Virus record (IMG/VR): IMGVR_UViG_3300042566_001780
Location: 62,001 to 126,000 of that record
DNA length: 64,000 nt
Strand: one strand, 5' to 3'
The notes below the pieces were generated by a model, which had not been told where the DNA came from, did not search any database, and saw nothing but the letters and a program-made list of their open reading frames with translations. Below, in pieces: positions 1-56,868 of the stretch. Both the position numbers and the translations under genes were made by a program. Every line of letters begins with the position of its first letter. Within the stretch, counting starts at the first letter, position 1.

Positions 1-2
1 AT

Positions 3-290
3 GGAAAACGTAAATTCCAAGATTCTTACAAAGAAGTGCAAATTGATCAATTATTTCGTTTAGCATCCCAAACATCAAAAGCTGATATTGAGGGATTTAA
101 AGAATACCTTTTACAAGGTACAATTGAAGCAATTAAATGGAATCAAGATCCGGTTGAAATTATGACAGACGGTACTTCATTCACGCTCAAAAAGGGTGAT
201 TACCTTTTGAGAGAATTAGATGGAAAAGAATTTGTGTTCACTGTAGAAAATCGTGGTACTTTTGAATCATCACCAAGAAAGAAAGTTTAA
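3..290 (+). CDS. hypothetical protein, 5'-truncated by window edge
   Basis: Frame of ORF 36..290 stays open to the left edge of the window. Confidence 0.6.
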   Translation, partial: GKRKFQDSYKEVQIDQLFRLASQTSKADIEGFKEYLLQGTIEAIKWNQDPVEIMTDGTSFTLKKGDYLLRELDGKEFVFTVENRGTFESSPRKKV

Positions 291-292
291 TA

Positions 293-841
293 ATGACTGC
301 TGAAAAAACCGAGAAGCCTAAGAGAAAAAATACTTCTAAGAAAAAAGGAAATGGCTTTGAATTGACAGTAGCAAAACTGTTGTCAAAAGAATTAGCACCA
401 ATGAACTTTATTCGAACCCCTGGATCTGGGGCACGAGTTGGCGGAAAGAACTTTGCTACCATTGGCCAAATGTTCGGTGAAGAGGCATTAAAGATTTTTG
501 TTGGCGATGTTGTCCCAGTTAATGAAAAACAAATAGGCAAGAAGTTTAAAGTATCATGTGAATGTAAGTTCTATGCAACGCAGGATCACTTTACATCAGT
601 TATGATGGGATCGGGCTTAATCTTCAAATGGATGAAAGAATCAGAGGATGACGCTCAAAAGATCGATAAACTTCCAGTCCTAATCTTTAAGTGGAATCAT
701 ACACCTATTTTCATTGCATGTACCGACGACAATATGCCAGTTGACTGCATTAAGATGATTCTACCGAGAGAAAATCTGTCTAGCATCAAAGTTGGTATCC
801 TTGAAGAAGTTCTCAAACATAAAGATTTTTGGATAGAATGA
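293..841 (+). CDS. Holliday junction resolvase, Hjc-like PD-(D/E)XK nuclease
   Basis: KKKGNGFELTVAKLL, RTPGSGA, GDVV and ECKFY motifs typical of phage Hjc-type resolvases. Confidence 0.75.
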   Translation: MTAEKTEKPKRKNTSKKKGNGFELTVAKLLSKELAPMNFIRTPGSGARVGGKNFATIGQMFGEEALKIFVGDVVPVNEKQIGKKFKVSCECKFYATQDHFTSVMMGSGLIFKWMKESEDDAQKIDKLPVLIFKWNHTPIFIACTDDNMPVDCIKMILPRENLSSIKVGILEEVLKHKDFWIE

Positions 842-867: not shown

Positions 868-2097
868 ATGACACGCCCGTTTGACTTATCTCTTAATCGA
901 GAAATTGAGGAATCTAGTCCTCTACATTGGAGAAAATTTTGGCCAAATCTCCAACGTATACATCCTACTAAAGTAGCATTACGCCAATCTATTATTTTGT
1001 GGGTAGCAAACCTGCATTATTCATGTCAAATGAATCCCCGCGGGTTCAACTATACTGAAATCCGTCTTACTGATTTGCGTCAGCAAGTCCGCGATTATCG
1101 AGTCATTATTGATTATTTCTTTGAAGTTGATCAACGCGGTTTTTGCATAGATGCTGATCATTATGAGGTGTCTCGCTTAATCCCTAAAGAAATTGGGTTT
1201 GAATTATCCCAAGAGATCAAGTTGGAAATCCCAAAGGCAGCATATATACCTCCTTCAAAACCAAAAGATGGTACTGTGTCAACAGTAAACATCTTCAATC
1301 GGGATAGTATAGAACAGCTTTTACTAGAAAATAAGCGCTATGATCTTTGGCCCCAAGTTAAGTGGCTGATAAATCAAGGCGATGCGGTAGAGTTTATTTT
1401 TCAGAAAAGTGGAAAACTTCAACAACGCGATACTAGCATTTGGCCTATTCAAGCAATTGAGACTTGGCCCTCTTGGCTGAGAGAAAAGTTATTTGGACCT
1501 GGGATTGACCTTGATTCTGCATATGTTCAGTTTATGATCAAGTCAGTGCAACCGTGCTATGATTCATTTCATAGTATGAAAACCGCTATACCAGATTTAG
1601 TTGATTTGATTTATGACAAAGAGCAATTTAGAAAATATCTGTGTCAAGATGTAATGAATTTGCCATACACAGAGAATAATATCAAGAGCATAAAACAGAT
1701 CATCATGGCTATTGCCAATGGATCTCGAATATCTGCAGATCTGACAAAATGCAGCAATTATTCTGAATCAGCAAAATTGCTTGTTGAATGTATGCGTGAT
1801 TCAAATGAAGAATATTTGGTCAAAGCTGCTAATAGGTTTCAACAAATTTCCCATCAATTTAGTACAGCTAAAAAGATGGCGTGTTTATATCTTACTAAAA
1901 GACATCCATCACGACTAAATCAAAAAGTAATTTTCAGAAACTATTTTGAGTGGGAAAGAACTGCGCGATATGCTATTTGGGAAGAATGTGGCCGACACGG
2001 TATCATGGTGCACGATGGGATTGACGGTATACCTGAATCGTACATTAAAAACATCGATTCGATAATGGATAAACTTCAACTTAAGTTGTCCACATGA
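868..2097 (+). CDS. divergent family A polymerase-like protein (palm motifs only)
   Basis: GIDLDSAY (motif A-like), IKQIIMAIANG (motif B-like), IMVHDGI (motif C-like); 409 aa. Confidence 0.45.
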   Translation: MTRPFDLSLNREIEESSPLHWRKFWPNLQRIHPTKVALRQSIILWVANLHYSCQMNPRGFNYTEIRLTDLRQQVRDYRVIIDYFFEVDQRGFCIDADHYEVSRLIPKEIGFELSQEIKLEIPKAAYIPPSKPKDGTVSTVNIFNRDSIEQLLLENKRYDLWPQVKWLINQGDAVEFIFQKSGKLQQRDTSIWPIQAIETWPSWLREKLFGPGIDLDSAYVQFMIKSVQPCYDSFHSMKTAIPDLVDLIYDKEQFRKYLCQDVMNLPYTENNIKSIKQIIMAIANGSRISADLTKCSNYSESAKLLVECMRDSNEEYLVKAANRFQQISHQFSTAKKMACLYLTKRHPSRLNQKVIFRNYFEWERTARYAIWEECGRHGIMVHDGIDGIPESYIKNIDSIMDKLQLKLST

Positions 2098-2102
2098 AAT
2101 TG

Positions 2103-2129
2103 AAAAAGGGTAGCATTGCTACCCTTTTT
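2103..2129. terminator. bidirectional intrinsic terminator
   Basis: AAAAAGGGTAGCA-T-TGCTACCCTTTTT between convergent genes. Confidence 0.8.
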
Positions 2130-2349
2130 AGCGTGAGAATGGATTTTTTGCTTCTTCTTTAAGTCGTTTGTTTAAGAATTCTACAGCTAAATCTCTTTCA
2201 ACAGCAGACATATTCAGCACTGTTTCGTAAGGTATAGCGCCTTTTGAAAAGTATGATATTTCAATTGCGGATTGTAGTAAAGATTTAGCTTCAAGCTGCA
2301 ATCGATCTATTGTTGCTATGATCCCGGTGCGATCGCCACTCGAAATCAT
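2128..2349 (-). CDS. baseplate hub assembly catalyst, T4 gp51-like
   Basis: 73 aa, YETVLNMSAVERDL motif, ATGA overlap with the gp26-like gene. Confidence 0.55.
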   Translation of the reverse strand: MISSGDRTGIIATIDRLQLEAKSLLQSAIEISYFSKGAIPYETVLNMSAVERDLAVEFLNKRLKEEAKNPFSR

Positions 2350-3143
2350 TCTGAGAAAAAACTGACAGGGTTCAATGGTAATTCAACCCTCATTTCTTCT
2401 CCACAGTCACGACACTTCAACTTTACAACTTGATCTGGGCCCCAGTCATTAAGCTGGGATGCTGCTTCGGTGATCTTATTGATTGACGGGGTGGTGAGTG
2501 TCTTGAGCCATTCTTCAATGAACTTTGGATCGGACGTGTCATCAACCTTTTCGATCATACTTAAAAGATTGCTCATAGCAATTTTCTTAATGTCATCTTG
2601 AGTTAATTCTTTTTTACCTTCAGATTGGTGGAATAACTTCACTACATCTGAAAAACGCATTGGACGCGTGACAACTTTAAACTGACCATCTACTATCACT
2701 ACCCGCTTTACCTCGATTAGGGTAGGATCCAGCTTTTTCATCGAAGCTGCCAAACTTTCTAAGTCAACCACATAAGAATGCTTTTTTGCATTCTCACAAT
2801 CATGCGTCACTTCAATGCGATACTCCGAACCATAAGTGGTTAGACGCAAGAAGAAAAGCAGCGCATCAATGTCTCTACCATATAGTTCGAGGGGCTTTTT
2901 AATTCCTGGAGCACATTCTGCCACTACTGCTTCTAATGCGGTACCATTAAATAACAGGTCCGGGTTCTTCAAGTTGATTTCTGTTAATGCTGTCATTGGG
3001 TGAATATGCATTTCACCTTCTTTGACAGAAATATCTAATTCACCATTGGAATAAAAAGCTCCTAATGATGGGAGTTGAAATACCCGACCTGGTAACTTTA
3101 CTTTGGATAATAGTGGATTGACTGTTTGCTGTGTGCTGCTCAT
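2346..3143 (-). CDS. baseplate hub subunit, T4 gp26-like
   Basis: LPSLG.FY, HPMT..E, DIDALLFFLRL.TYG and C-terminal CxxC...NPVSFF; next to the tape measure gene. Confidence 0.7.
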   Translation of the reverse strand: MSSTQQTVNPLLSKVKLPGRVFQLPSLGAFYSNGELDISVKEGEMHIHPMTALTEINLKNPDLLFNGTALEAVVAECAPGIKKPLELYGRDIDALLFFLRLTTYGSEYRIEVTHDCENAKKHSYVVDLESLAASMKKLDPTLIEVKRVVIVDGQFKVVTRPMRFSDVVKLFHQSEGKKELTQDDIKKIAMSNLLSMIEKVDDTSDPKFIEEWLKTLTTPSINKITEAASQLNDWGPDQVVKLKCRDCGEEMRVELPLNPVSFFSE

Positions 3144-20444: not shown

Positions 20445-22013
20445 TTAGAGACGAACTAATTTGTGGTTGCCACAATCGAGCAACTTGATGAACTTGTTCC
20501 TACGCATGTTCTCATCTTCAGTGACATTTGGATCGAATGATTCTCCAAGCAATTCTGGAAGCTTGCTCTTCATCGATTCATAACGTGTCACGATCCCAAA
20601 TCTCGGATGGAACCAAGAATAGCCAGGTTGAGTTTGCTTGACGTGGTTGAATCCAGATGCCAAATAACCAGCACCATTTGAAAACCGAGCATCAGCATAA
20701 GTCAAAATTGGACCATCTACTAAGCTCATCAATTTGCTAACACCACCACGAACACTAACATTTTCTTTGAAGCACATCCTGAGCAGTTCAAGCCCTTCAA
20801 ATTTCTCGAACCTAGGTTTCCCAAAGGTGGCTACTCCAACTAATTCATTTTTGAAGAACAATCCCAACTTCAAACTAGATCGGCATGAACCTTGCAAATG
20901 GTAAGTTTCCAAAAAATCTGAACTAGTTTGAAGATCAATTTCTCTCACTTCACACTGTCTTGCATTCAACTTTCGTTCAGCTTTTCCCAACTTGGACCTA
21001 ATTATAGATTTGATAATGGATTGCTTTTCACTCCATTCATAATCCCAAATGTGAATGACTTGCACTCCTGCTTTTTCTGCCATTAATGATTTCTCAAGCA
21101 AGCCAATTTTGCCAGATTCATCATGATGCCAATAGACACCATTCATCTCTATTGCGATGTTTTTCTCGGGGATGACAATATCAAGTTCTTTTGGTGCTAT
21201 GATTTTTCGGTCATTTCTTAAACATTCAAAACCCAAAGAGCTAACAAAAGAAAATAGCTCTTTTTCAGGTTTAGATTGCCCGCAACATCCAGGGCATCTT
21301 AGCTTTTCAAATAATCCTAAATTGAACTCATGCCCACACTCATGCTTAACTTTAACAAAATCACTTGTTAAGTTGATAATGTCAAATTCTTGTTGAACTC
21401 GATTTATGAATTTTTGCAGTTGAATCTCATGTAATTTTGGCAACAAGATTGATGAGGACCAGGAGCAGGAGCTTTCTGCCCCGTACCGGCTCATCATAGT
21501 AGAACGCATTTTTGCATTTAGCTCAGCAGATTCGGTAGTGAAACCCCCAAACTTTTCTTGCATTGTAGAAGCAATTTGCTTTCTTATTGCTGCAACTTTT
21601 AGCGGGTGATCAACACCATAACGAGATAAGCATGTTTCTTTAGTCTTTGCTCTATGCAGTTCTGTCTTTGCAAAATTGTCTGCACCATACCGTGAAACCA
21701 TAGTAGAAGCTGATTTCTGCCTAACTTCCTCAACTGCCAATGTACTTCTCACCCCATAACGCTCTACACACGTAGATTCAATGGAGTTGAGTCTCTTCTC
21801 TTTCACCCTCTTCGAAGATGAAGCACACTCAGCAGAACAAAAATCCCGATAGCCTTTCATGAAGGAAAGAAAAGCCGTCTTCCTTCCACATTCACAAACT
21901 TTTTCTGAAATGCCGTTCAACGCAACATAAATGAGTTCAGAAACCGTGTCAAACTTTCCATGAACCTTCTCTAGTTCATTAATCAATTCTTTGTTTCTAG
22001 AAGCGGATGCCAT
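20445..22013 (-). mobile_element. Hef-like homing endonuclease (repeats, Vsr-like nuclease, GNAT-like domain)
   Basis: TCxxRYG repeats; ELDIVIP..AIEMNGVYWH; ELLRMCF..GGVSKL..TYADARF. Confidence 0.8.
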
Positions 22014-22146: not shown

Positions 22147-22512
22147 ATGGCTAAAAATCCAGGTTTAAAACGCGCTCATGAAACCGATGAGTATACCCAA
22201 GAAATGATTATGGAATTACAGAAGTGTTCTGTAGATCCAATTTATTTCATGGAGAAATATGTAAAAGTGCAACACCCCGTAAAGGGATCTGTGCCATTTG
22301 TTCTTTATGACTACCAAAAAGAAATGGTAATGGGGATACATGAGAATAGATCTACAATTTTGCTCCTGAGTCGCCAACTGGGAAAGTGTTTTTTTGGGTC
22401 CACAAAACTGCTAAATATTGTTAAGCCAACGGGCTTTAAAAAATATTTACTTAAGTTATTGGACAAGGAAACATATGACAACTTATTTCGCCCAAGCTCT
22501 ACAGAAGAATAA
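22147..22512 (+). CDS. terL: terminase large subunit part 1 (80 aa) plus split intein 1 N-fragment (41 aa, from 22387)
   Basis: DPIYF..LYDYQ..SRQLGK followed by intein block A CFFGST. Confidence 0.9.
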   Translation: MAKNPGLKRAHETDEYTQEMIMELQKCSVDPIYFMEKYVKVQHPVKGSVPFVLYDYQKEMVMGIHENRSTILLLSRQLGKCFFGSTKLLNIVKPTGFKKYLLKLLDKETYDNLFRPSSTEE

Positions 22513-23572
22513 AACCAAAACTCTTTTCACCAATTTGAATAAATGCCCAGTCTGCGAATCTACATTTTCAGATAATGAAGGTCATGGCAAATTTTGCTCT
22601 AAAGCGTGCTCTTCTAAAATAGAAAAGATGTGCATAATTTGCAATAAGAAAATTATTAGCAAAAAGCCTGACAAATTTTGCTCTAAGGCATGTCGTGATG
22701 TACCTGGCAAAATTAAACTAAACGAAAAGAGAAAAGCTGAAGGCGGAGTGCAATGTCTTATTTGCGGGGATTATGGTAAATCATTAGCATTACATCTTAA
22801 GAAACTCCATAACATTAGTGCTGAAGATTATCGAAATCAGTATGGTGGTAAAACAGTATGTGAATCTACTTCCACTAAGCTTTCTGAATTAACATCTGGA
22901 GAAAACAATCCATGGTATAACCACGGTGGTACTATTTCTCCATTCTCCAAGAACAACAAAAAGTTCATTGGTCTTTCTGAAGAAGAAAAACAGCAGAAGG
23001 TTAATGAAGCAGTTGATGCTTATATCAAAACTACCCCAAAAGAAAATCGTCCGATGAATGTTGAGTATTGGATCAAACGCGGTATGACTGAGGAAGAAGC
23101 AAAAGCACAAGTTTCTAAAAGACAAACTACTTTCAGCTTAGAGAAATGTATTGAGCGCTATGGTGAAGAAGCAGGTAAAGCTCGTTGGCAAGAACGGCAA
23201 GAAAAATGGCACAAAAATTATAAAAAGAGCAATTACAGCCAAGTCTCCCAAAGATTATTCTTTAACCTAGTTGAAGAATATCCTGATGCTATGTTTGCTG
23301 AGCACGGTTCTGAATTTGTCTTTAGGACCAAAACGGGATCAGTTTTCAAATTAGATTTTTGGGTACCATCTTCTAAACATTTGATTGAATTTGATGGTGA
23401 CTATTGGCATGGAAAACGAGATGCAATCGCAAACCCTAATAGGTCAGCTAATAGAGATAAACAAATTTTAGAAACAGATAGTGAAATAAAAATCTTACAC
23501 GTCAAAGAGCGCGATTTCTACAAGGATCCAGAAGGAACAATCCAAAAATGCAAAGACTTCTTAAAAACTTAA
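22475..23572 (+). mobile_element. free-standing Vsr-like homing endonuclease inside fractured terL
   Basis: Zn-finger repeats, KRQTTFSLEKCIERYG, LDFW..IEFDGDYWH; AAGGA RBS; CTAAATA at 22411. Confidence 0.8.
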
Positions 23573-24642
23573 AGCAGCGTCTTATTGATTGGTGCTTGCA
23601 GAAACAAGAAATTACCATCAAAGAACTTTTTCAATCATCAAATCCTTACCAAGTTTCCATTGATGATCTTACTGGAAATTTGAAATTTGTCCAAGAAGGC
23701 CATACTGAACGGTTAGTCCAAACTCCAACAGGCTGGGCACCTATCAAACGAGTTCTCCAAACTGTGCCATATCAAGCATGGCAATTGCGTGTTGATAGTT
23801 TAGAACCATTGATTGCAGCAGATGAGCATATCATTATGACTGAATCTGGCGAAAAATGGATGAAGGACTTATCACCCGGAGATTTAGTTCATACTATTAA
23901 TGGACTAAAGCCCGTTGAATCTATTCAAAATTTGGATAGATATGAAACTATGTATGACTTGGAATTAGATGACGATGGTCACGTCTTCTACACCAATGGT
24001 ATTTTGAGCCATAATACGACAGTAGCAGCCATGTATATTCTATGGTTTGCTACATTTCATGCGGCAAAAAGATGTGTCATTGCATCTAAAGCAATGAACC
24101 ATGCTGTGGAAATTATGTCTCGTATTAAATTTGCTTACGAGGAATTGCCGAGCTGGATTAAAAGTGGCTGTACCTTCTATAATAGAACTAGTATCGAATT
24201 TTCAAATAAATCTGTCATCGTTTCTGAGGCAACATCAGAGAAAACAGGTCGAGGTTCTTCGCCATCTATTATTTTCCTTGATGAGATTGCGTTTATTTCG
24301 CGCAGAATTCAAGAAGAAATGTGGAGTTCTTTAACTCCAGCATTAAGTACGGGCGGCAAATTTATTGTAACCTCTACACCTAATGGAGATTCTGATCTAT
24401 TTGCTACATTATGGCGTGGAGCAAATGCTGGTACAAATGGTTTTACGCCAATGCAGTTCTTATGGTGGCGCCATCCTGATCGAGATCAGGCTTATTATGA
24501 CGATATGGTTGGGAAACTCGGGCCGGTAAAATCCGCCCAAGAGTTAAACTGTGCCTCATATGACACTCTATTAGACACTTCTATAGGTAATTTAACTATT
24601 GAAGAGTTGTATACGCGGTTGTGCGGCAATCAGGGAGAGTAA
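23548..24642 (+). CDS. terL: intein 1 C-fragment (156 aa), terminase part 2 (178 aa), intein 2 N-fragment (30 aa)
   Basis: MYDLE..NGILSHN/TTV; Walker B IIFLDE; STPNG; AQELN/CASYDT. Confidence 0.9.
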   Translation: MQRLLKNLKQRLIDWCLQKQEITIKELFQSSNPYQVSIDDLTGNLKFVQEGHTERLVQTPTGWAPIKRVLQTVPYQAWQLRVDSLEPLIAADEHIIMTESGEKWMKDLSPGDLVHTINGLKPVESIQNLDRYETMYDLELDDDGHVFYTNGILSHNTTVAAMYILWFATFHAAKRCVIASKAMNHAVEIMSRIKFAYEELPSWIKSGCTFYNRTSIEFSNKSVIVSEATSEKTGRGSSPSIIFLDEIAFISRRIQEEMWSSLTPALSTGGKFIVTSTPNGDSDLFATLWRGANAGTNGFTPMQFLWWRHPDRDQAYYDDMVGKLGPVKSAQELNCASYDTLLDTSIGNLTIEELYTRLCGNQGE

Positions 24643-24644
24643 GT

Positions 24645-25751
24645 ATGGCATCAAATCAAACAATTGCACTCAATTATGAAGGCGTTAAAGTTCTTACCCC
24701 AACTGGTTATCAGTATTTTACTGGTATAAGCAGATCCTGGCATGAAGAAATTATTGAGATAAAGACGGCAAATAGAAGTATTAAAGCCGGAGTAAAGCAT
24801 AAATTCTTAACTTTAGATGGTTGGGTCCAATCTAGAGATTTAAAAGTTGGCGATGCTTTAGTCAATAATCAATGTGAAGATGAATGCATTACTGAAATAA
24901 ACATCTTAGCTGAACCTCAGTGGATGTATGACTTATTAGATGTTGAGTCCGGTAATACATATGTAGCTAATGGGCTTATTTGTCATAATTGCGAGTTTCT
25001 CTCAAGCGATGCGCTGCTAATTAGCTCGGTAAAGCTGCATCAAATCAAATATGAAAAGCCTATTTTTGAATCAATGGGATTTAAATTTTGGGTACCAGAA
25101 GAAGCGCTTGGTGGTAAAGGCAAAATATATCTAGTAGGTTTAGATCCAGCTACTGGGGGCGGGAATGATTTTTCTGTTATCGAAATATTTGATTTTCCTG
25201 GGTTAAATCAAATTGGAGAATTTCGCTCTAATGAAATCAACATTCCATTATTGTATGCTAAACTGTCGTGGATTTTAAAGAAGCTTACAGCCAATGTCAA
25301 TGGTGGCATTGCTGAAGTATCATGGACATTTGAGCGTAATGGCATTGGCGAAGCGATTGGTGCGTTATACTTTAATGATGAGAAACAAGTTGAAGAAGCA
25401 GATTTGTTTAATGATCATCATACAAAGTTTGGGGTGTATACAACTGGAAAAACGAAGATTTTGAATTGTTTGCAGTTGAAGACACTGGTTGAAAAGATCC
25501 ATAATGGTTTGAACATCAAGAGCGAACTGCTTATACATGAACTGAAGAACTTTGTGGCAAAGGGTGGTGGGTATGAGGCCAAGTCGGGTTCTACGGATGA
25601 CGCGGTGATGGCGACGATCTTGATCATGCGGTTGCTAAAGCGGCTTTCAGAGTATAATGAAGAAGCTTTTTCAACAGTCCATGAGTACGTTGACCCGAAT
25701 GCCGACATACCTGCAGAAGATTCTGATTCACCTCTGCCAATAATTCTATGA
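24645..25751 (+). CDS. terL: intein 2 C-fragment (115 aa) plus terminase nuclease domain (253 aa)
   Basis: GGGAG RBS; MYDLL..NGLICHN/CEFLSS; GLDPATG, FERN, DDAVMA. Confidence 0.9.
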   Translation: MASNQTIALNYEGVKVLTPTGYQYFTGISRSWHEEIIEIKTANRSIKAGVKHKFLTLDGWVQSRDLKVGDALVNNQCEDECITEINILAEPQWMYDLLDVESGNTYVANGLICHNCEFLSSDALLISSVKLHQIKYEKPIFESMGFKFWVPEEALGGKGKIYLVGLDPATGGGNDFSVIEIFDFPGLNQIGEFRSNEINIPLLYAKLSWILKKLTANVNGGIAEVSWTFERNGIGEAIGALYFNDEKQVEEADLFNDHHTKFGVYTTGKTKILNCLQLKTLVEKIHNGLNIKSELLIHELKNFVAKGGGYEAKSGSTDDAVMATILIMRLLKRLSEYNEEAFSTVHEYVDPNADIPAEDSDSPLPIIL

Positions 25752-44919: not shown

Positions 44920-47634
44920 ATGATCAAAACAATTATCAAGCGCAATGGATCTCGTGAACAATTTAATGCAGCAAAGCTAAATGGCTGGGGAGAATGGGCA
45001 GCACGCAAACTAGGCCATCTAGTTGATTGGCCTGCAGTAGTATTGCATGCAGTTAGCACTCTACCAGAAGATTGTACTAGTGAACAGCTGCAAAATGCGC
45101 TTATTGATTTTTGTTTGGCTAAGAAAACTTGGGAATACAACCTGATGGCTGGTCGGTTGTATGCTGCACTAATGTCTAAGCAAATTCATGGTCGTAAGAA
45201 GCCATCTATTAAAGATCTGCAAACTGCATTGTTCAATGATGGCTTGATGGCTCAGCTTAATTATTCTGATGAAGAATATGAGCAGATTGAGAAAATGATC
45301 AATCATAATCTTGATCTGAAAAGCTCACATTATGAATTGCAACAGATTCGTTACAAATATGCCCTTCGCAATAAAGTGACTGGTAAAGAATACGAAACTC
45401 CACAGTTCACGTATATGCGCATGGCTATGGCTCTTGCAGAAAATGAGCCAAAAGAAAATCGCATGACTGATGTTGCTAAATGGTACGAGCATCTTTCACA
45501 TAAGCGCATCAATGCTCCGACACCTTACTACACTAACCTTGGCACTACTCATAACGGTTATGCATCGTGCTGCGTGTATACAACGGGTGATACGGCTCCT
45601 TCTCTTGCCGCTGGCGATCATATTGCTTATATGATGACGGTGATGAGCGCCGGTATTGGTTCGCATATCAAAACCCGGTCACTTGGAGATCCAGTGCGTG
45701 GCGGCCTCATTAAGCACCAAGGTAAAATTCCATACTATCGCGCATTGGTCGGTGCTATTGGTGCAAACTTGCAAAATGGCCGGGGCGGCGCAGCTACTGT
45801 CCACTACACCGCGTATGATCCAGAAGTTGAAGTTATTGCAAAGCTCAAGAATGCAATGACACCAGCTGCTAAGCAAGTTCGTGGCTGCGACTACAGTTTT
45901 GGATCTAACAAGTTCTTCGCAAAAATGGCTGCGCAGGATAAAGAAATTGCCACCTTCTCTTATCACGATGCTCCTGAACTCTATGAAGCACAGTATGACG
46001 GCGATTCCACCAAATTCGAAAGACTTTATGAAGAATTTTTAGCTTCAGAAAAAAAGCGCACAGTTTTTTCTGCGCGCAAAATTCTTATAAGCGCTCTTGA
46101 AGAGGCGTATGAAACTGGCCGCCATTACCTGCACTTCACTGATACTATCAATAAGCATACACCTTTCAAGGAAAAGATTTATTCCTCGAACCTGTGTCTT
46201 GCGGGTAATACTTTAGTTAAAGCTAAGATTGATGGCTTTGAACGTGAAGTTACTCTTGAAGTTCTAGATGATGCATTCTGGGCTGGTGCTTCTATTGAAG
46301 TTATGTCGATGAATGATAGCACAAAGATTCGCGAGTACAAAAAAGTGGTGGCATCTAAACTGATGCGTCGCTCTGCAGAAGTTTTGTCTATCAAAGATGA
46401 ACTGTTTAGCAATGAGATTGTTTGCACTGGCGATCACAAAGTGTATACAGTTAATCGCGGCTATGTGGAAGCTAAAGATCTTCTGCCAAGTGATGCCCTT
46501 AATGTCAATGGCGAAATTAGCTTTGGCGTGATTAAAACCGAATTGCAAGATCGCATTGATGTCTATGACATTACTGTTGAAGACAACCACAATTTTTATG
46601 CAAACAATATTCTGGTGCATAACTGCCAAGAAATTGCTTTGGTGACCAAACCATTCAAGTCAGTGCAGCAGCTGTATGAAGATTACACCGAGGACTCTGG
46701 CGAAATCGCTCTTTGCAATATTGCCGCTATCGTAGTCTCAAACATTGAGAATGATGCTCAATATGATGAAGTTGCTTATTACACATTGAAGATGATTGAT
46801 GTAGGTATTCATAAGAGCACCTACGTCTTTAAGGCTCTTGAGCAAACTGCAAAAGCCCGCCTTAATGCTGGTGTTGGAATGATGGGTGTTGCTCATCTAA
46901 TGGCAAAAAATGGTAAGAAGTATTCTTCTCAAGAAGGTAAAAACTTTATGCATGAACTAGCAGAAACTCATGCATGGCATGTCATCAATGCTTCTCTGAA
47001 GCTTGCAAAAGAAAAAGGCAATGCTCCATGGATGCATAAGACCAAGTGGCCTGAAGGGTGGTTGCCAATTGACACGTATGAAAAGAAAGTCGATAGTTTA
47101 GTGACTGTTGAAAATAAGCGTGATTGGGAATCTCTTAGAAAAGAAATCATTGCCAATGGTGGCATTCGTAATTCTGTCTGTATAGCCTTCATGCCGGGTG
47201 AGTCGTCAAGTTTGTCGAGCGGAACCACTAATGGCCTATATCCAATCCGAGATTTTGACCTTGTTAAGACTAGCGATACTATGGCAGTCAATTACGTAGT
47301 ACCTGATGCCACGAAGCTCCGCGATAAATATGAAATAGCCTGGGATGTTCCTACCACTGATCTAATTCATCATTATGCAATTGTCCAAAAATGGACAGAT
47401 CAAGCAATTAGCGCTGATCTTTATCGCAAGATTCAAGGTGATGATACGGTTGGCACTACTGAAATGATGGAAATTTATTTCAATCTGGTACGCTATGGAA
47501 TTAAGACCCGCTATTACCAAAATAGCTTGACTGCAAAGGGTATTGATCTTAATTCATCTGAAACAAATGATGATGCCCAAGTTATAATTAACGACTCTGA
47601 TGATGAAGCTAATTGTGAAGGCTGTTCTCTATGA
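44920..47634 (+). CDS. nrdA: class Ia ribonucleotide reductase alpha subunit with cis mini-intein
   Basis: ATP cone IIKRNG, ASCC, SSNL/C.EI, MPGESSS, C-terminal CEGC. Confidence 0.95.
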   Translation: MIKTIIKRNGSREQFNAAKLNGWGEWAARKLGHLVDWPAVVLHAVSTLPEDCTSEQLQNALIDFCLAKKTWEYNLMAGRLYAALMSKQIHGRKKPSIKDLQTALFNDGLMAQLNYSDEEYEQIEKMINHNLDLKSSHYELQQIRYKYALRNKVTGKEYETPQFTYMRMAMALAENEPKENRMTDVAKWYEHLSHKRINAPTPYYTNLGTTHNGYASCCVYTTGDTAPSLAAGDHIAYMMTVMSAGIGSHIKTRSLGDPVRGGLIKHQGKIPYYRALVGAIGANLQNGRGGAATVHYTAYDPEVEVIAKLKNAMTPAAKQVRGCDYSFGSNKFFAKMAAQDKEIATFSYHDAPELYEAQYDGDSTKFERLYEEFLASEKKRTVFSARKILISALEEAYETGRHYLHFTDTINKHTPFKEKIYSSNLCLAGNTLVKAKIDGFEREVTLEVLDDAFWAGASIEVMSMNDSTKIREYKKVVASKLMRRSAEVLSIKDELFSNEIVCTGDHKVYTVNRGYVEAKDLLPSDALNVNGEISFGVIKTELQDRIDVYDITVEDNHNFYANNILVHNCQEIALVTKPFKSVQQLYEDYTEDSGEIALCNIAAIVVSNIENDAQYDEVAYYTLKMIDVGIHKSTYVFKALEQTAKARLNAGVGMMGVAHLMAKNGKKYSSQEGKNFMHELAETHAWHVINASLKLAKEKGNAPWMHKTKWPEGWLPIDTYEKKVDSLVTVENKRDWESLRKEIIANGGIRNSVCIAFMPGESSSLSSGTTNGLYPIRDFDLVKTSDTMAVNYVVPDATKLRDKYEIAWDVPTTDLIHHYAIVQKWTDQAISADLYRKIQGDDTVGTTEMMEIYFNLVRYGIKTRYYQNSLTAKGIDLNSSETNDDAQVIINDSDDEANCEGCSL
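46195..46623 (+). mobile_element. 143-aa contiguous mini-intein in nrdA
   Basis: CLAGNT..CTGDH..VYDITV..ILVHN/C. Confidence 0.92.
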
Positions 47635-51141: not shown

Positions 51142-51579
51142 ATGAAATCAAATTTAGACTCAACCTACATTAGAATGGCCATCATGATGGCAGAGAACTC
51201 TAAGGCTGTGCGTTCTAAGGTAGGCGCTATCTTGGTGACCAGCCATGGCGTTATTCTACCTGGTTATAATGGTACTGTTCGCGGACTTGACAACATTTGC
51301 GAAAACGAAGTGAATGGCGTTCTTGTTACCAAACCTGAAGTCATTCATGCTGAGCTAAATTGCATTCTTAAAGCTGCAAAAGAAGGCATTTCGATTGTAG
51401 ACTCCACCGTCTACATTACTTTGTCTCCATGCATGCAGTGCTCTGCAATGATTGCACAGAGCGGCATAAAGCGCGTAGTATTTTTGCATAAGTATCGTGA
51501 TTCTGCAGGAATTGATTTCCTTCATAAAGCCGGTGTTTCAGTTGAACATATCAACATAGATGGCAATGCAAGAAGTTGA
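51142..51579 (+). CDS. dCMP deaminase
   Basis: KVGA, GYNG, HAELN, TLSPCMQC. Confidence 0.92.
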   Translation: MKSNLDSTYIRMAIMMAENSKAVRSKVGAILVTSHGVILPGYNGTVRGLDNICENEVNGVLVTKPEVIHAELNCILKAAKEGISIVDSTVYITLSPCMQCSAMIAQSGIKRVVFLHKYRDSAGIDFLHKAGVSVEHINIDGNARS

Positions 51580-52117
51580 AAATTGGGTTGAGCTTGAAGA
51601 TCGCATTCTTCGATTTGATGGCGTGTCCATTATCTCTCCTATAGATGTACCTGCGTTTTTAATGCGTGGTGCACTCCCTAATTCTATTCGCGTCACCGAA
51701 ATCAATAAAGACATTGACTTATTCAATCAAAGCTGTCTTGAGTCAGATTTGATTGGCACTGACATTTTTGACATTCAACTATCACCCATTGAAATTTGTA
51801 TTCCAGAAAAATACAAACATTTGGATGTAGTTGAACTTATTCTCCCAAGATACAAAAAAGTTTGCCAATCATATTCAAAAGAAGAAATAGAAAAATCTGA
51901 AATTCGAATAGCTCAGGAGCTTAATGAATTTGAGCGGCGTAATATTCTTGACCTAATCAAAATCATTGCTTTTATTATTGATGAGTTTAAGCACTCAAAT
52001 CAACTTTGGGGAGTTGGTCGTGGATCTTCATGCGCCTCATATCTTCTGTTTTTGATCGGCCTTCATATGGTAGATCCTGTCAAATATGACATACCACTAT
52101 CCGAATTCTTGAAGTGA
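51560..52117 (+). CDS. DnaE (Pol III alpha)-like fragment A
   Basis: WGVGRGSSCASYLLFLIGLHMVDPVKYDI..EFL. Confidence 0.85.
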   Translation: MAMQEVENWVELEDRILRFDGVSIISPIDVPAFLMRGALPNSIRVTEINKDIDLFNQSCLESDLIGTDIFDIQLSPIEICIPEKYKHLDVVELILPRYKKVCQSYSKEEIEKSEIRIAQELNEFERRNILDLIKIIAFIIDEFKHSNQLWGVGRGSSCASYLLFLIGLHMVDPVKYDIPLSEFLK

Positions 52118-52142
52118 TCAAGAAAACAGCAAAAAATTCTTG

Positions 52143-52150
52143 CTAAATAG
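52143..52150 (+). promoter_or_regulatory. late promoter CTAAATAG
   Basis: Upstream of the GroES operon. Confidence 0.6.
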
Positions 52151-52182
52151 AGAATCCCCTATATTTTATGGAGTAATCATAG

Positions 52183-52383
52183 ATGCTCAAAACAGTTCGA
52201 AGTGCGCGTGGCACAGTTGTAGATTTTCAATTACTTGCAATTAAGTCGCAGTTGGCGGCAAAGCCTGCCCCGAAAGAAGTAATTGATCGTAAAGTGTTCA
52301 TTGAAGAACGAGACGGAGTGAAAGCTAAAAACTCCATTCCTACCACACCAGAAGAAATTATTTCTGCACCTAAGACAAAGTGA
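52183..52383 (+). CDS. conserved hypothetical protein
   Basis: RSARGTVVDF; GGAG RBS. Confidence 0.55.
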   Translation: MLKTVRSARGTVVDFQLLAIKSQLAAKPAPKEVIDRKVFIEERDGVKAKNSIPTTPEEIISAPKTK

Positions 52384-52712
52384 ATCTAATGACAAATTTA
52401 CGTCCCCTCAAAAATACTGTTCTCTTCCAATTTCTTGATGATACTGGTGGAGCAAAAGGTCGCTTCTCTGAAAGATATAACGGGTCTATTGTTATTCCGG
52501 TTCTTAACTCCAATCAAAACAAATCTTCCCGATGGGGTAAAGTTGTTAGCATTGGCCCAGAGGTTCAAGAGGTTAAAGTTGGCGACTTCATTTTGATTGA
52601 ACCTCTCCAATGGACAAACAATGAAGTTTTTGAGGGTGAGAAGATCTGGAAGACAGATGAAGGCAAGATTATGCTTTCAACAGACGACGAATCTCAAACC
52701 TATAATTTCTAA
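52380..52712 (+). CDS. GroES-like co-chaperonin
   Basis: LRPL..VL, GKVVSIGP, VKVGD. Confidence 0.8.
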   Translation: MNLMTNLRPLKNTVLFQFLDDTGGAKGRFSERYNGSIVIPVLNSNQNKSSRWGKVVSIGPEVQEVKVGDFILIEPLQWTNNEVFEGEKIWKTDEGKIMLSTDDESQTYNF

Positions 52713-52714
52713 TC

Positions 52715-53872
52715 ATGTTTTTTATTGCACTAACTTTTGCTGCGGCTTTTTTGATTGAAGGGCTCGGCACACTCGTATCCGTCATTGGATTGAGTAGCCT
52801 GTTTGGCTCAAATTTGATCATTATTGCTTTAGCAATTTCCCTAGATCTTGGGAAAATTGTTGTTGTGAGTTTGCTTTACACTTACTGGAACAAGCTTGGT
52901 GCAATCATGAAAAGCTATGCACTGGTGGCAGCAATAGTCACTATGACTATTACTTCTGCCGGTGCTGCAGGATACTTGACAGGAAAATTCCAAGAAGCTA
53001 TCCTTGGATCTCAAGAATCATCGATTAGACTCAATGCTCTTCTTGATGAGCAAAAACAATTGACTGAAAGAAAGCAGCAGATTGATGCCCAAATTGCTGC
53101 TATTCCTGATCGATATACCGCTGCCCAAAAAATTCGTTTGATGAATCAGTTTAAAGCTGAACAGACTATTGTCAATAAGCGAATTAATGAGATCACTGCA
53201 CAAGTACCAGAGCTGAAAGTTGCCGATATTAGCAAACAAGCTAAAGCTGGTCCAATTATTCTGCTTGCAAAATCATTCAACGTTACGATTGAAGAAGCTA
53301 TCCTATGGGTGGTGATGATGATCATATTCGTGTTTGATCCATTGGCTGTATTCTTGATCGTTGCTGGCAACTTCTTAGTAGCACAAAGAAAGAAAAATGA
53401 AGAAGTGGCTAAAGAAGTGGCTAAAGAAGTGGTAATTGAGCCTACAGATGCTCCATTAATTGAAGATGATGCAGCGGTGATACCACGAGCTGAAGCTATC
53501 ATTCAACCAATGATCATTGAAGAAAAACCTCAAGTTGACCTTGAATTAGTTCCTATCGAAGAAAAAGAAGAACCTATTCAAGAAGAAGTTATTTCTGAAA
53601 TTCAAAAAGTCAAGAAGCCAAGAAAACCTCGTGCTCCTAAGAAATTGAAACTGGTTCCTATTGTTGAAGAACTGCAAATTGAAGAAGAACCAGTAAAAGA
53701 GACTGTATCTAAAAGACCAGAAATTAAGTTAACTGACTTAATTCATAAAGGCCCACGCCCTGCATCAATTTTGGATGATGTTACACCGGATAATTCTGTA
53801 AAGTTTGATGAAACCCCGGATGCCAATCTGGCATCTTTCTATAAGGACCAAAAGCCTACATCCTCAAACTAA
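52715..53872 (+). CDS. membrane protein with coiled coil and acidic tail
   Basis: N-terminal TMs, IIFVFDPLAV motif. Confidence 0.6.
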   Translation: MFFIALTFAAAFLIEGLGTLVSVIGLSSLFGSNLIIIALAISLDLGKIVVVSLLYTYWNKLGAIMKSYALVAAIVTMTITSAGAAGYLTGKFQEAILGSQESSIRLNALLDEQKQLTERKQQIDAQIAAIPDRYTAAQKIRLMNQFKAEQTIVNKRINEITAQVPELKVADISKQAKAGPIILLAKSFNVTIEEAILWVVMMIIFVFDPLAVFLIVAGNFLVAQRKKNEEVAKEVAKEVVIEPTDAPLIEDDAAVIPRAEAIIQPMIIEEKPQVDLELVPIEEKEEPIQEEVISEIQKVKKPRKPRAPKKLKLVPIVEELQIEEEPVKETVSKRPEIKLTDLIHKGPRPASILDDVTPDNSVKFDETPDANLASFYKDQKPTSSN

Positions 53873-56085: not shown

Positions 56086-56677
56086 ATTTTCCTCTGGTGA
56101 TATCGACATTGATACACCTTCCTCTTTTGATCCTTGCGATTTATTCAAAAATTGGGTTAGGGCTTCTTTAGTAAAAGATGGAAAATTAGTACCACACCCA
56201 AGTGGATACTATCCATCTAATATTCCAAAGGATCCTATCACTAGTCTATCTAGTATCCCATATAACGAAGCTGAATTATTGGGATATTCAAAGATTGACT
56301 TCCTTCATCTGTCAATTTACAATTATGTCAAAGATCGAGCTGATCTTGAACAGTTAGCAAATTCACAGCCCGATTGGAATTTGCTATTGCTACCATCTGT
56401 CCAAACCAGATTATTTCAACTTTCAAATCACGGTCAATTGCTAGATGAAATAAGACCTAAAAGTATCCAAGATCTTGCAGATTGTTTGGCACTCATTCGG
56501 CCCGGCAAGAGAGAAATTCTGCCAATTTATAAAAAAGACAAACAAGTTGGAAGAAGAATGTTGTGGGCAAAGTCTGATAATGATGCATATACCTTCAAAA
56601 AATCGCATGCTATCTCATATGCACTGGTGATTGTGGTGCAATTGAATTTGATAGCCAATTCAAGGATGACATTGTGA
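56066..56677 (+). CDS. DnaE (Pol III alpha)-like fragment B, catalytic palm
   Basis: GDIDID, HPSG, KIDFLHL, ALIRPG, YTFKKSHA.SY; start uncertain. Confidence 0.85.
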   Translation: MKVKEFRFSSGDIDIDTPSSFDPCDLFKNWVRASLVKDGKLVPHPSGYYPSNIPKDPITSLSSIPYNEAELLGYSKIDFLHLSIYNYVKDRADLEQLANSQPDWNLLLLPSVQTRLFQLSNHGQLLDEIRPKSIQDLADCLALIRPGKREILPIYKKDKQVGRRMLWAKSDNDAYTFKKSHAISYALVIVVQLNLIANSRMTL

Positions 56678-56868
56678 CCGAGGAAGATTGGGGGCAGCGA
56701 GCTAAAGAGCTGATTGAAATCTTTTCAGACGACAAGATTAGTGATAAGATTGACAAGATTATGTGTCAAGGGTGCCAAAGAATTATTTTTGTTGACGCGC
56801 AAAAATGTGTACAAACCTCAAATGTAGTATTACAATCAACCCATCTCATCAACCAAGCTAAATTGATC

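What the first reader, a model, noticed from the sequence alone, without database searches (positions are those of the whole stretch)
868..2097. Compact, highly divergent PolA/T7-RNAP-superfamily protein
Motif order is SGKLQQRDTS..WLREKLF (like TGRLSS..IR..F), GIDLDSAY (A), KSIKQIIMAIANG (B), MVHDGI (C) in 409 aa with no exonuclease domain. It may be a stand-alone polymerase or primase of unknown template, in a genome that also has a mini-DnaE.
Basis: inference. Interest (0 to 1): 0.6.

Follow-up and report, generated by a model that had tools for sequence, protein, structure and literature searches.

The report
Minimal family-A polymerase in jumbo phage
An unannotated 409-residue gene of an uncultured T4-like jumbo phage encodes a stripped-down, proofreading-less relative of DNA polymerase I and T7 RNA polymerase with its catalytic residues intact, giving the phage a third polymerase-like enzyme that is predicted to be made late, together with its DNA-junction-cutting enzyme.

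Summary
It has no Pfam, PHROG, NCBIfam, PDB-sequence or cultured-phage match. It belongs to a narrow family: 218 word-search hits, but only 50 representatives among 1.84 billion proteins. All members sit on T4-like jumbo-phage contigs.

[quoted passage not shown] Profile-profile alignment scores 33, against 10-18 for shuffled controls, and gives the predicted register. R187, R205, D214, K276, G285, E363, H382 and D383 are invariant down to 18% identity.

The protein has palm and fingers, two short helices where the thumb would be, and a new 130-residue N-terminal domain. It has no exonuclease. The motif-B Tyr is Asn.

The phage also has PolB, a DnaG-type primase, gp41, gp55 and the known split mini-Pol III, so this is an accessory enzyme. 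The gene closes a conserved string (gp47-gp46-F161-junction resolvase-...-target), and a CTAAATAG late promoter heads the F161-to-target part.

My best reading is a late accessory DNA polymerase acting on recombination or packaging intermediates. Substrate and template are untested. The closest known enzymes are the TV-Pol and CcPol minimal A-family polymerases.

The parts
868..2097 (+). Gene for the 409-aa minimal family-A-type polymerase (P0001)
   Evidence: ORF. Family of 218 homologs. AF2 model with pLDDT 92.5. PolA/ssRNAP-only structural matches.
868..1257 (+). N-terminal domain (aa 1-130), alpha/beta, no significant known fold. Weak resemblance to winged-helix DNA binders. Takes the place of the exonuclease domains of Pol I.
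   Evidence: Domain model with pLDDT 90.8. VIA best Z 4.0 and Foldseek E > 0.5; weak rows are enriched in wHTH proteins. Invariant F84, F85, G91.
1258..1518 (+). Palm, first part (aa 131-217). Two short helices (148-154, 158-169) lie where the thumb would be. A beta-hairpin (173-192) carries invariant R187 (codon 1426-1428). Helix 202-209 carries invariant R205. Strand 212-215 ends in motif-A D214 (codon 1507-1509).
   Evidence: DSSP of the model. hhalign register R187~Klenow R668 and R205~R690. Conservation.
1519..1986 (+). Fingers (aa 218-373), all-helical. Motif B is K276xxxM280xxA283-N284-G285-S286 (codons 1693-1725). Helix 349-373 carries F356, Y359, F360, W362, E363, R364, R367, Y368 (PolA 'ER841' helix Q equivalent).
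   Evidence: hhalign: K276~Klenow K758 / T7 RNAP K631; N284-G285~Y766-G767 / Y639-G640; E363-R364~ER841. Conservation.
1987..2094 (+). Palm, second part (aa 374-409). Beta-hairpin 379-386 with motif C M-V-H382-D383-G-I-D386-G-V-P (codons 2005-2034).
   Evidence: H382 and D383 invariant in A2. Aligned to Klenow H881-D882 and to T7 RNAP H811-D812...P818.
293..841 (+). Upstream gene of the same operon: PDDEXK_15 / RusA-like Holliday-junction resolvase. 26 nt separate its stop from the target's start.
   Evidence: PF24608 E 3e-22. phrog_244. Linked to the target in 29 of 54 loci; Endo VII takes its place in 10.
1..290 (+). 3' part of the first gene of the operon (family F161; the full ORF is genome C1:61796-62290, 164 aa; function unknown). 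Its late promoter GCTAAATAG lies just outside the window, about 220 nt before window position 1.
   Evidence: ORF map. Promoter sequence. Motif enrichment 39 of 356 upstream regions against 2 expected. F161 is conserved in 31 loci.
2128..2349 (-). Convergent small conserved gene f74 (phrog_18291, unknown function), first gene of the structural block that follows.
   Evidence: Present in 30 loci directly after the target module.
2346..3143 (-). T4-type baseplate hub gene, which marks the conserved downstream boundary of the module.
   Evidence: PF12322 E 2e-13 and phrog_150. Present in 42 loci.

Best explanation
The gene encodes a catalytically competent, exonuclease-less, minimal polymerase of the family-A / T7-RNAP superfamily. 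It has palm and fingers, two short helices in place of a thumb, and a lineage-specific N-terminal domain. It is carried by a clade of uncultured T4-like jumbo phages, the 'group 2.2'-like phages that also have PolB and a split mini-Pol III. It is not the replicase and does not replace the primase. It is an accessory enzyme transcribed late, from a gp55-type CTAAATAG promoter, as the last gene of a unit that also encodes the Holliday-junction resolvase. In most relatives that unit lies directly downstream of the Mre11/Rad50-like gp47/gp46. I infer that it performs short-patch, low-processivity, template-directed DNA synthesis on recombination or packaging intermediates, for example gap filling or extension of 3' ends made by gp46/47 and the resolvase. 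Chemistry would be the usual two-metal mechanism, with D214 and D383 holding the metals, K276 binding the triphosphate and R187 contacting the primer terminus. Shown here: the fold, the invariant residues, gene linkage and the promoter motif. Inferred: enzymatic activity, the DNA (not RNA) product, and the substrate.
For: Fold: AF2 pLDDT 92.5, pTM 0.87. Foldseek PDB: all 50 listed hits are family-A polymerases. VIA-align wide: the top 13 are all PolA or ssRNAP. Examples: Pol theta Z 9.9 (235 aligned, rmsd 4.6), Klenow Z 9.3, yeast mtRNAP Z 8.8, T7 RNAP Z 8.0. BFVD and the ESM Atlas also return PolA-annotated and unnamed viral clusters. Sequence: hhalign scores 33.2 against PolA (P 0.0018) and 33.0-35.6 against T7-like RNAP (P 0.002-0.004). 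Reversed templates score 13-16 and shuffled templates 10.6-18.4. Catalytic residues are invariant to 18% identity. Accessory role: the own genome has split PolB gp43, mini-Pol III, gp41, an adjacent Toprim primase, FEN, a DEDD exonuclease, gp44, gp32, UvsX, gp46, gp47 and gp55. Linkage: in 54 loci the order gp47-gp46-F161-(PDDEXK or EndoVII)-F199-f72-TARGET-f74-hub-TMP recurs at 33-51% identity. Late expression: CTAAATAG is 15-19-fold enriched upstream of genes and heads the F161-resolvase-target operon. In other contigs it lies upstream of F161 in 9/30 loci and of TMP in 12/33, against a 0.7% background, and never directly upstream of the target. DNA product: an aromatic residue (Y219; Y/F in 39 of 48) sits five residues after the motif-A Asp, where Pol I has its steric-gate Glu and T7 RNAP has Gly. 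This is inferred from the alignment and from established knowledge of Klenow E710 and T7 G542.
Against: No activity, expression or structural data exist. Motifs B and C look more like T7 RNAP (K..M..A[Y>N]GS; HDxxxxxP) than Pol I. The near-universal motif-B Tyr is Asn, and the O-helix Arg is present in only 23 of 67 members, so nucleotide handling may be atypical. In the own genome gp46/47 lie 52 kb away, so that linkage is not obligatory. Operon membership suggests, but does not prove, a shared pathway. A cultured relative (RsoM2USA) lacks the gene, so it is dispensable for at least some phages. Late timing rests on a promoter motif only.
Confidence: 0.45

Rival explanations
1. It is a minimal single-subunit RNA polymerase, in the manner of T7 RNAP, mtRNAP or phage N4 RNAP II gp16 (404 aa). 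It would transcribe a special gene set or make RNA primers or R-loops for late, recombination-dependent replication, and the N-terminal domain would provide DNA recognition.
For: Motif B K276xxxM280xxA283(N)G285S286 matches T7 RNAP K631xxxM635xxA638(Y639)G640S641 at five of six positions. Motif C HDGIDGVP matches HDSFGTIP. Q221 lies at Asp+7 as in T7 (D537...Q544), a comparison read directly from the sequence. mtRNAP and T7 RNAP score within about 2 Z of the best DNA polymerases, and mtRNAP is tied with them. N4 RNAP II gp16, of similar size, matches at Z 5.8. Weak structural hits of the N-terminal domain are mostly winged-helix DNA binders.
Against: The phage encodes gp55 and DsbA, and its single strongly enriched upstream 7-mer family is the gp55-type CTAAATAG; no second promoter-like motif emerged. 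The protein has no T7-type promoter-binding N-terminal domain and no specificity loop: only about 100 helical residues lie between motifs B and C. Tyr639, which selects rNTPs in T7 RNAP, is Asn. A bulky Tyr occupies the position of T7 G542. PF00940 gives no hit. Iyer et al. 2021 report no RNAP in group 2 jumbo phages.
Confidence: 0.2
2. It is a primase or prim-pol of the TV-Pol / CcPol-MP kind: a minimal A-family polymerase that starts DNA chains de novo on single-stranded DNA, possibly with a small partner encoded nearby (F161, F199 or f72).
For: The minimal architecture has no nuclease domain, a reduced thumb and a size of 400-600 aa. This is the architecture Iyer et al. 2008 describe for TV-Pols, which they predict to be prim-pols. 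CcPol-MP shows experimentally that an A-family polymerase with a shortened thumb plus a small ssDNA-binding partner is a primase. Small conserved genes of unknown function accompany the target, and f72 often overlaps its start codon. BFVD matches include virophage replication proteins.
Against: The phage has a DnaG-type Toprim primase adjacent to gp41. There is no linkage to any helicase, D5-like or otherwise. F199 and f72 are absent from the own genome, so no universal partner apart from F161 and the resolvase. The family HMM finds nothing in Ma-LMM01, which carries a TV-Pol (a weak negative).
Confidence: 0.15
3. It is not a templated polymerase. It is either an inactive structural or regulatory relic, or a nucleotidyltransferase with another job, such as template-independent tailing of DNA ends or synthesis of a small nucleotide product.
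For: The thumb is nearly absent. The motif-B Tyr that stacks on the template base is replaced by Asn, and the O-helix Arg is mostly missing. RsoM2USA appears to have lost the gene.
Against: The full set of residues that contact primer, metals and triphosphate (R187, D214, K276, H382, D383) and the template-side helix (E363, R364, R367) is invariant or nearly so across very divergent members. That pattern is expected of an enzyme that acts on a primer-template. Strong purifying selection acts over the whole length (mean column identity 56% among 67 sequences).
Confidence: 0.1

Closest known systems
TV-Pol family (Iyer, Abhiman & Aravind 2008, Biol Direct 3:39), including SCCmec CcPol of the CcPol-MP primase (Bebel et al. 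2020; Rice 2022)
   Same: Minimal superfamily-A polymerase core with no nuclease domain, within the 400-600 aa size range of TV-Pols. Beta-hairpin with an invariant Arg. Two catalytic Asp. Helical fingers with a conserved Lys. Reduced thumb (as reported for CcPol). Encoded by viruses or mobile elements that already have other polymerases.
   Different: No detectable sequence-profile link. RxxxK is reduced to K in two thirds of members. The motif-B Tyr is Asn. The N-terminal domain differs. Gene context is a T4-like late recombination/resolvase module, not a D5-like helicase, integrase, gamma-delta resolvase or transposase. No OB-fold partner is shown.
Bacterial and phage DNA polymerase I family (Klenow, Bst, Taq, T7 gp5; Pol theta and Pol nu), Pfam PF00476
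   Same: Palm and fingers topology. Motif order TGR(LSS) - motif A Asp - O-helix Lys...(Y)G - ER helix - motif C HD. Compact spacing between the Arg hairpin and motif A (27 residues against 37 in Klenow).
   Different: No 3'-5' or 5'-3' exonuclease domain. Thumb reduced to two short helices. No PF00476 match. Y766 is Asn, F762 is Met and E883 is Gly. About 280 residues for palm plus fingers, against about 400 in Klenow.
T7-like single-subunit RNA polymerases, especially phage N4 RNAP II gp16 (404 aa, PDB 6dt7)
   Same: Motifs B (K..M..A.GS) and C (HD.....P) are closest to T7 RNAP. Similar size to the N4 RNAP II catalytic subunit. Structural match Z 8.0 (T7 RNAP), 8.8 (yeast mtRNAP), 5.8 (N4 RNAP II).
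   Different: No promoter-recognition domain, specificity loop or intercalating hairpin. Y639 is Asn and G542 is Tyr. No PF00940 match. The host phage uses a gp55-type late sigma factor.
Split minimal Pol III alpha of group 2.2 jumbo phages (Iyer et al. 2021)
   Same: Another accessory, minimised polymerase in the same phage lineage and in this same genome (window ~51.8-52.1 kb).
   Different: Unrelated fold (Pol beta-like nucleotidyltransferase, not an RRM palm), and already described. The protein studied here is not mentioned in that survey.

Membership tests
Family-A polymerase superfamily (PolA + T7-like RNAP + TV-Pol) | Right-hand palm (RRM-like) with a fingers insert after the first palm strand | tested here: met
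   AF2 model with pLDDT 92.5. Foldseek: all 50 listed hits are PolA. VIA: the top 13 are PolA or ssRNAP, Z 6.5-9.9 over residues 130-409.
Family-A polymerase superfamily | Motif A Asp at the end of the palm strand and motif C Asp in a beta-hairpin (metal ligands) | tested here: met
   D214 (strand 212-215) and H382-D383 (hairpin 379-386) are invariant in 48 sequences down to 18% identity. hhalign aligns HD to Klenow H881-D882 and T7 H811-D812. The motif A register is uncertain by 1-2 residues. No 3-D superposition was available.
Family-A polymerase superfamily | Beta-hairpin Arg (T/DxxGR; Klenow R668, T7 R425) | tested here: met
   R187 in hairpin 173-192 is invariant and aligns to R668.
DNA polymerase I family (PF00476) | O-helix RxxxKxxxFxxxYG | tested here: not met
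   K276 and G285 are invariant. The Arg is present in only 23 of 67 members, Phe is Met, and Tyr is Asn in 67 of 67.
DNA polymerase I family (PF00476) | Match to the Pfam model at or near threshold | tested here: not met
   No PF00476 hit for the protein, for the own genome, or for any of 48 family members at E <= 10.
DNA polymerase I family (PF00476) | Helical thumb gripping the duplex | tested here: inconclusive
   Only two short helices (148-154, 158-169) lie between the N-terminal domain and the Arg hairpin. Whether they act as a thumb cannot be told.
T7-like single-subunit RNAP (PF00940) | Pfam model match; N-terminal promoter-binding domain; specificity loop between motifs B and C | tested here: not met
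   No PF00940 hit. The protein is 409 aa in all. Residues 286-378 are helices only.
T7-like single-subunit RNAP (PF00940) | Motif B Tyr (Y639) that selects rNTPs | tested here: not met
   The aligned residue is N284, invariant in the close family.
TV-Pol (Iyer et al. 2008) | Standalone minimal domain of 400-600 aa with thumb, Arg hairpin, two Asp and fingers, and no nuclease | tested here: met
   409 aa with the features above. No exonuclease fold in residues 1-130.
TV-Pol (Iyer et al. 2008) | Fingers RxxxK motif | tested here: inconclusive
   The Lys is invariant. R/K at K-4 in 23 of 67 members, otherwise I or L.
TV-Pol (Iyer et al. 2008) | Linkage or fusion to a D5-like helicase, or to an integrase, gamma-delta resolvase or transposase of a mobile element | tested here: not met
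   In 54 loci the neighbours are gp47, gp46, a junction resolvase, a baseplate hub and a tape measure; no helicase or integrase.
TV-Pol (Iyer et al. 2008) | Sequence-profile connection to recognised TV-Pol members | tested here: inconclusive
   The family HMM found nothing in Microcystis phage Ma-LMM01, which is reported to carry a TV-Pol. No TV-Pol sequence was available for a direct profile-profile test.
PolA-SSB primase (CcPol-MP) | Adjacent small OB-fold ssDNA-binding partner, with a helicase in the same operon | not tested
   Small conserved neighbours (F161, F199, f72) have no family assignment. No helicase is in the operon.

The most novel reading that the evidence does not exclude
The family is a previously unrecognised third lineage-specific polymerase of T4-like jumbo phages. 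It is mechanistically intermediate between Pol I and T7-type RNA polymerases: a Pol I-like compact palm entry combined with T7-like motifs B and C, and Asn in place of the sugar-sensing or template-stacking Tyr. It would act as a late, resolvase-coupled initiator or extender, making short RNA or mixed primers, or DNA patches, at processed recombination junctions. That would link junction resolution directly to DNA synthesis before packaging.
Probability: 0.15. Interest if true: 0.8.

Novelty: new variant of a known kind. Interest (0 to 1): 0.62.

Why it matters
T4-type phages are the textbook model of a self-contained replisome built around a family-B polymerase. The 2021 census of jumbo phages lists PolB plus a split mini-Pol III for this group and no RRM-palm family-A enzyme or phage RNA polymerase. 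A conserved, catalytically intact, about 280-residue palm-plus-fingers core is one of the smallest family-A-type polymerases seen. It helps define the minimal functional core of the superfamily, and its motifs mix Pol I and T7 RNAP signatures. Its fixed position behind Mre11/Rad50 and the junction resolvase, under a late promoter, gives a directly testable idea: that late recombination-dependent replication or concatemer processing in these phages uses a dedicated polymerase. A very small, exonuclease-free polymerase with an unusual nucleotide-binding helix may also interest enzyme engineers.

Tried and rejected
1. Sequence-family searches with the single protein against Pfam, PHROGs, NCBIfam, PDB sequences, and tblastn of 50,697 phage records gave no significant hit. 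A PDB search with the A1 profile found nothing. A Pfam scan of all 48 extended-family members at E <= 10 gave no PolA or RNAP hit.

2. hhalign of the family profile against single sequences (Klenow, T7 RNAP, T7 DNAP) was not significant. It became informative only with diverse profiles.

3. The two word searches seeded with T7 RNAP and Klenow returned only close relatives (74-100% identity) and added little.

4. The distant cousins P0161, P0163 and P0164 have no Pfam and no PDB-sequence hits, and sit on contigs of 3-4 kb with no useful context.

5. Primase-replacement hypothesis: rejected. A Toprim ORF lies next to gp41.

6. Sole or replicative polymerase: rejected. PolB is present.

7. Counterpart in cultured relatives: RsoM2USA has an ORF-free 1.4-kb gap in the slot, with only weak remnant-like hits. 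XacN1 has a different arrangement.

8. TV-Pol link through Ma-LMM01: no hit, and uninformative.

9. N-terminal domain fold: no significant match.

10. F161, F199, f72 and f74: no function from Pfam, PHROGs or the atlas.

11. Virion-packaged enzyme with a T4-type capsid-targeting, protease-cleaved N-terminus: considered, but the N-terminal 15 residues are not conserved (consensus), so not pursued.

No other route was tried and read laying was not used.

13. Complex prediction was not used. I do not claim a specific physical partner, and a pass among neighbours has low evidential value by the tool's own figures.
Full report
**1. The observation**

The window is part of a 291,687-bp IMG/VR virus record (window = C1:62001-126000). 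The ORF at 868..2097 (+) starts with ATG and encodes 409 residues.

The phage is T4-like. The window holds a gp20 portal, gp21 protease, gp23 capsid, baseplate hub, gp32, UvsX, UvsW, RNR, the gp44 clamp loader and a ligase. Its capsid protein is closest (42-53% identity) to the jumbo myoviruses RsoM2USA, Stenotrophomonas CM1/RAS14, XacN1 and Xoo-sp13, and then (40%) to Rak2/PBECO4-type phages.

It is the split minimal Pol III alpha that Iyer et al. 2021 described as a hallmark of 'group 2.2' jumbo phages.

**2. A real but unannotated family**

The protein has no significant match in Pfam, PHROGs, NCBIfam or PDB sequences, and none by tblastn in 50,697 phage records.

The word-index search found 218 homologs. 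All are about 410 aa, none is named, none has a Pfam domain, and several lie on contigs of 100-350 kb. The exhaustive profile search of 1.84 billion representatives found only 50 at E <= 1e-3, many of them fragments. A few distant cousins of 360-750 aa were among them; they also lack Pfam and PDB-sequence matches.

Sixty-seven members, mostly at 41-50% identity to the query, share 56 invariant columns. When cousins at 18-20% identity are added, the invariant set shrinks to G91, R187, P193, P201, R205, D214, K276, G285, E363, G378, H382 and D383.

**3. Fold**

AlphaFold2 with the 67-sequence alignment gave pLDDT 92.5 and pTM 0.87.

- Foldseek against the PDB returned only family-A DNA polymerases in its 50 listed rows. 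These were Aquifex, Klenow, Bst, Taq, Pol theta, M. smegmatis Pol1, apicoplast Pol and T7 gp5, with prob 0.69-1.00 (at least 0.9 for most) and best E 1.4e-3.
- VIA-align, run independently against 48,161 chains, put only PolA or single-subunit RNAP entries in the first 13 rows. Among them were Pol theta (Z 9.9, 235 aligned, rmsd 4.6), SFM4-3/Taq (9.8), Klenow (9.3), Pol nu (8.9), yeast mtRNAP (8.8), T7 RNAP (8.0), T7 DNAP (7.8) and Pol gamma (7.6). N4 RNAP II (404 aa) came at Z 5.8.
- The aligned range is residues ~130-409.
- BFVD gave unnamed viral proteins (best E 3.5e-8), then PolA-annotated phage proteins and virophage replication proteins.
- The ESM Atlas gave an unnamed 461-aa cluster (TM 0.55) and a PF00476 cluster.

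Z values of 8-10 are not high on their own. What carries the argument is that the hit lists are exclusive to this superfamily and that two aligners agree.

**4. Residue-level test**

I built a diverse PolA profile (82 sequences: Klenow, T7 gp5, and 80 IMG/VR PolAs at 25-68% identity to Klenow) and a T7-like RNAP profile.

hhalign of the extended family gave these scores:

| Comparison | Score | P |
|---|---|---|
| Family vs PolA | 33.2 | 0.0018 |
| Family vs T7-like RNAP | 33.0 | 0.0039 |
| Family vs reversed templates | 13.3, 16.3 | - |
| Family vs 20 column-shuffled PolA templates | 10.6-18.4 | - |
| PolA vs T7-like RNAP (known relatives, same profiles) | 23.3 | 0.077 |

The PolA alignment puts R187 on Klenow R668 (the TGRLSS hairpin), R205 on R690, K276 on K758, N284-G285 on Y766-G767, E363-R364 on the ER841 helix, and H382-D383 on H881-D882. 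Around motif A the register is uncertain by one or two residues. D214 is invariant. D216 is Asp or Glu in 67 of 67 close members but varies in the cousins.

The secondary structure of the model agrees with the PolA palm: hairpin 173-192, helix 202-209, strand 212-215 ending in D214, helix from 218, an all-helical insert to 373, then hairpin 379-386 with HD at its tip.

Against T7 RNAP, motifs B and C are notably closer than to Pol I. K276xxxM280xxA283-N284-G285-S286 aligns with K631xxxM635xxA638-Y639-G640-S641, and HDGIDGVP with H811-D812-SFGTIP.

Departures from both families:

- The motif-B Tyr is Asn in all 67 close members.
- The O-helix Arg is R/K in only 23 of 67.
- The third carboxylate (Klenow E883) is Gly.
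- An aromatic residue (Y219) sits five residues after D214, where Pol I has the steric-gate Glu and T7 RNAP a Gly. That assignment rests on the alignment and on textbook knowledge of those enzymes, not on a superposition.

**5. What is missing**

Residues 1-130 fold confidently on their own (pLDDT 90.8) but match nothing significantly (best Z 4.0; Foldseek E > 0.5). The weak rows lean towards winged-helix DNA binders. There is no DEDD or FEN exonuclease domain.

Only two short helices (148-169) lie where the thumb should be. The catalytic core is thus about 280 residues, which is very small for the superfamily.

**6. Genome context**

The phage keeps the standard T4 set:

- a split gp43 PolB;
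- gp41, with a Toprim ORF directly adjacent;
- a FEN-type 5'-3' exonuclease, a DEDD 3'-5' exonuclease and DsbA;
- gp44, gp32, UvsX, UvsW and ligase;
- gp46, gp47 and gp55.

The PolA-like protein is therefore a third, accessory polymerase. It is neither the replicase nor a substitute for the primase.

In the own genome it is the last gene of a tight three-gene + strand operon: F161 (164 aa), the PDDEXK_15 junction resolvase, then the target. This operon diverges from the - strand replication cluster and converges on the structural block f74-hub, which is followed by the tape measure and portal.

Across 54 loci from IMG/VR and other assemblies (33-51% identity), the order gp55-gp47-gp46-F161-(PDDEXK or Endo VII)-F199-f72-TARGET-f74-hub-TMP recurs. 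F199 and f72 are missing from the own genome, and there gp55-gp47-gp46 lie 52 kb away. The constant companions are therefore F161, the resolvase and the structural block. F161, F199, f72 and f74 have no assignable function.

**7. Timing**

The 7-mers CTAAATA and TAAATAG are 15-19-fold enriched in the 60 nt upstream of genes (35-39 of 356 genes against about 2 expected). They precede the tape measure, prohead protease, gp32 and many large structural genes. With a gp55 homolog present, this is the late promoter of the phage (T4 consensus TATAAATA; my knowledge).

One copy, GCTAAATAG, lies just upstream of F161.

In the other contigs the motif counts are:

| Gene | Loci with motif upstream |
|---|---|
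| F161 | 9/30 |
| TMP | 12/33 |
| Endo VII | 3/10 |
| Target (directly upstream) | 0/51 |
| gp46/gp47 | 0/58 |
| Background per window | 0.7% |

The F161-to-target string is therefore predicted to be a late transcription unit.

**8. Interpretation**

Shown: a polymerase fold of the family-A superfamily with every core catalytic residue under strong constraint; an accessory status in the genome; conserved linkage to the junction resolvase, and usually to Mre11/Rad50; and a late-promoter signal.

Inferred: that the enzyme synthesises DNA in short patches on recombination or packaging intermediates. The aromatic residue at the steric-gate position, the compact Pol I-like spacing between the Arg hairpin and motif A, and the recombination context all favour DNA.

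The T7-like motifs B and C, the Tyr-to-Asn change and a possible DNA-binding N-terminal domain keep an RNA polymerase or primer-synthesis role open. The experimentally proven CcPol-MP primase and the predicted prim-pol function of TV-Pols keep a primase role open. I give these 0.45, 0.20 and 0.15, with 0.10 for a non-templated or inactive protein and the remainder unassigned.

**9. Comparison with the known**

The nearest described kind is the TV-Pol/CcPol group of minimal A-family polymerases. The architecture is the same. However, no sequence-profile link was found, the helicase/integrase context that characterises TV-Pols is absent, and the RxxxK and Tyr features differ. I therefore file it as working like a TV-Pol, not as a member.

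It fails the Pfam models and the O-helix signature of Pol I. It lacks the promoter-recognition elements and Y639 of T7-like RNAPs.

The family is not mentioned in the jumbo-phage census, which states that group 2 phages have PolB plus mini-Pol III and no RNAP of their own. I did not find it in the 2024 Caudoviricetes polymerase survey (term search only) or in my other literature searches.

**10. Verdict**

This is a new, narrow, strongly conserved family: a new variant within the known family-A polymerase superfamily. Its biological role is plausible but untested.

Noticed in passing
window 51560-53872 (PF07733 match at ~51854-52129): A piece of the split minimal Pol III alpha ('mini-DnaE'). 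The match contains one in-frame TGA. The family is already described for group 2.2 jumbo phages (Iyer et al. 2021).
   Followed up: partly
window 23548-25751: The large terminase region reads as two ORFs carrying Intein_splicing/PT-HINT plus Terminase_6N signals, so an intein (or a split) interrupts the terminase gene.
   Followed up: no
window 44920-47634: The ribonucleotide reductase large subunit carries an intein (Intein_splicing and PT-HINT hits at residues ~460-568).
   Followed up: no
genome C1:54504-55694 and 56103-57896 (- strand; about 4-7.5 kb before window position 1): The gp43-type family-B DNA polymerase is split into two ORFs (396 and 597 aa) with a 101-aa ORF between them.
   Followed up: no
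whole genome; within the window upstream of 3261, 8238, 38321, 48751, 49443 and 52183: CTAAATAG is the phage's late-promoter-like motif: 42 copies in the genome, and 39 of 356 upstream regions hold it against about 2 expected.
   Followed up: yes
L005:13625-15025 (Ralstonia phage RsoM2USA MG752970, record 251624-253024): A 1.4-kb unannotated, ORF-free gap lies exactly where the target gene sits in relatives (after PDDEXK-F199-f72, before the hub). Several family members give weak but co-located tblastn hits there (E 0.1-0.4, query residues ~181-250), so it may be a decayed copy.
   Followed up: partly
window 20445-22013 (-) and 22418-23572 (+): A 522-aa protein combines DUF7487, Vsr-like and Mom-like regions. 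It lies next to a ROS/MucR zinc-finger protein with a REase_MTES_1575-like end. Together they may be a DNA-modification or nuclease pair.
   Followed up: no
window 1-290 (F161), 2128-2349 (f74); L193:5141-5743 (F199), L193:5765-5992 (f72): Four conserved small proteins of unknown function travel with the polymerase gene. f72 often overlaps the target's start codon but is absent from this genome.
   Followed up: partly
window 57045-58073: A 342-aa protein has an RlaP-like (Pol-beta-superfamily nucleotidyltransferase, RNA-repair-associated) region and lies near the ATP-dependent DNA ligase at 59536-60891.
   Followed up: no
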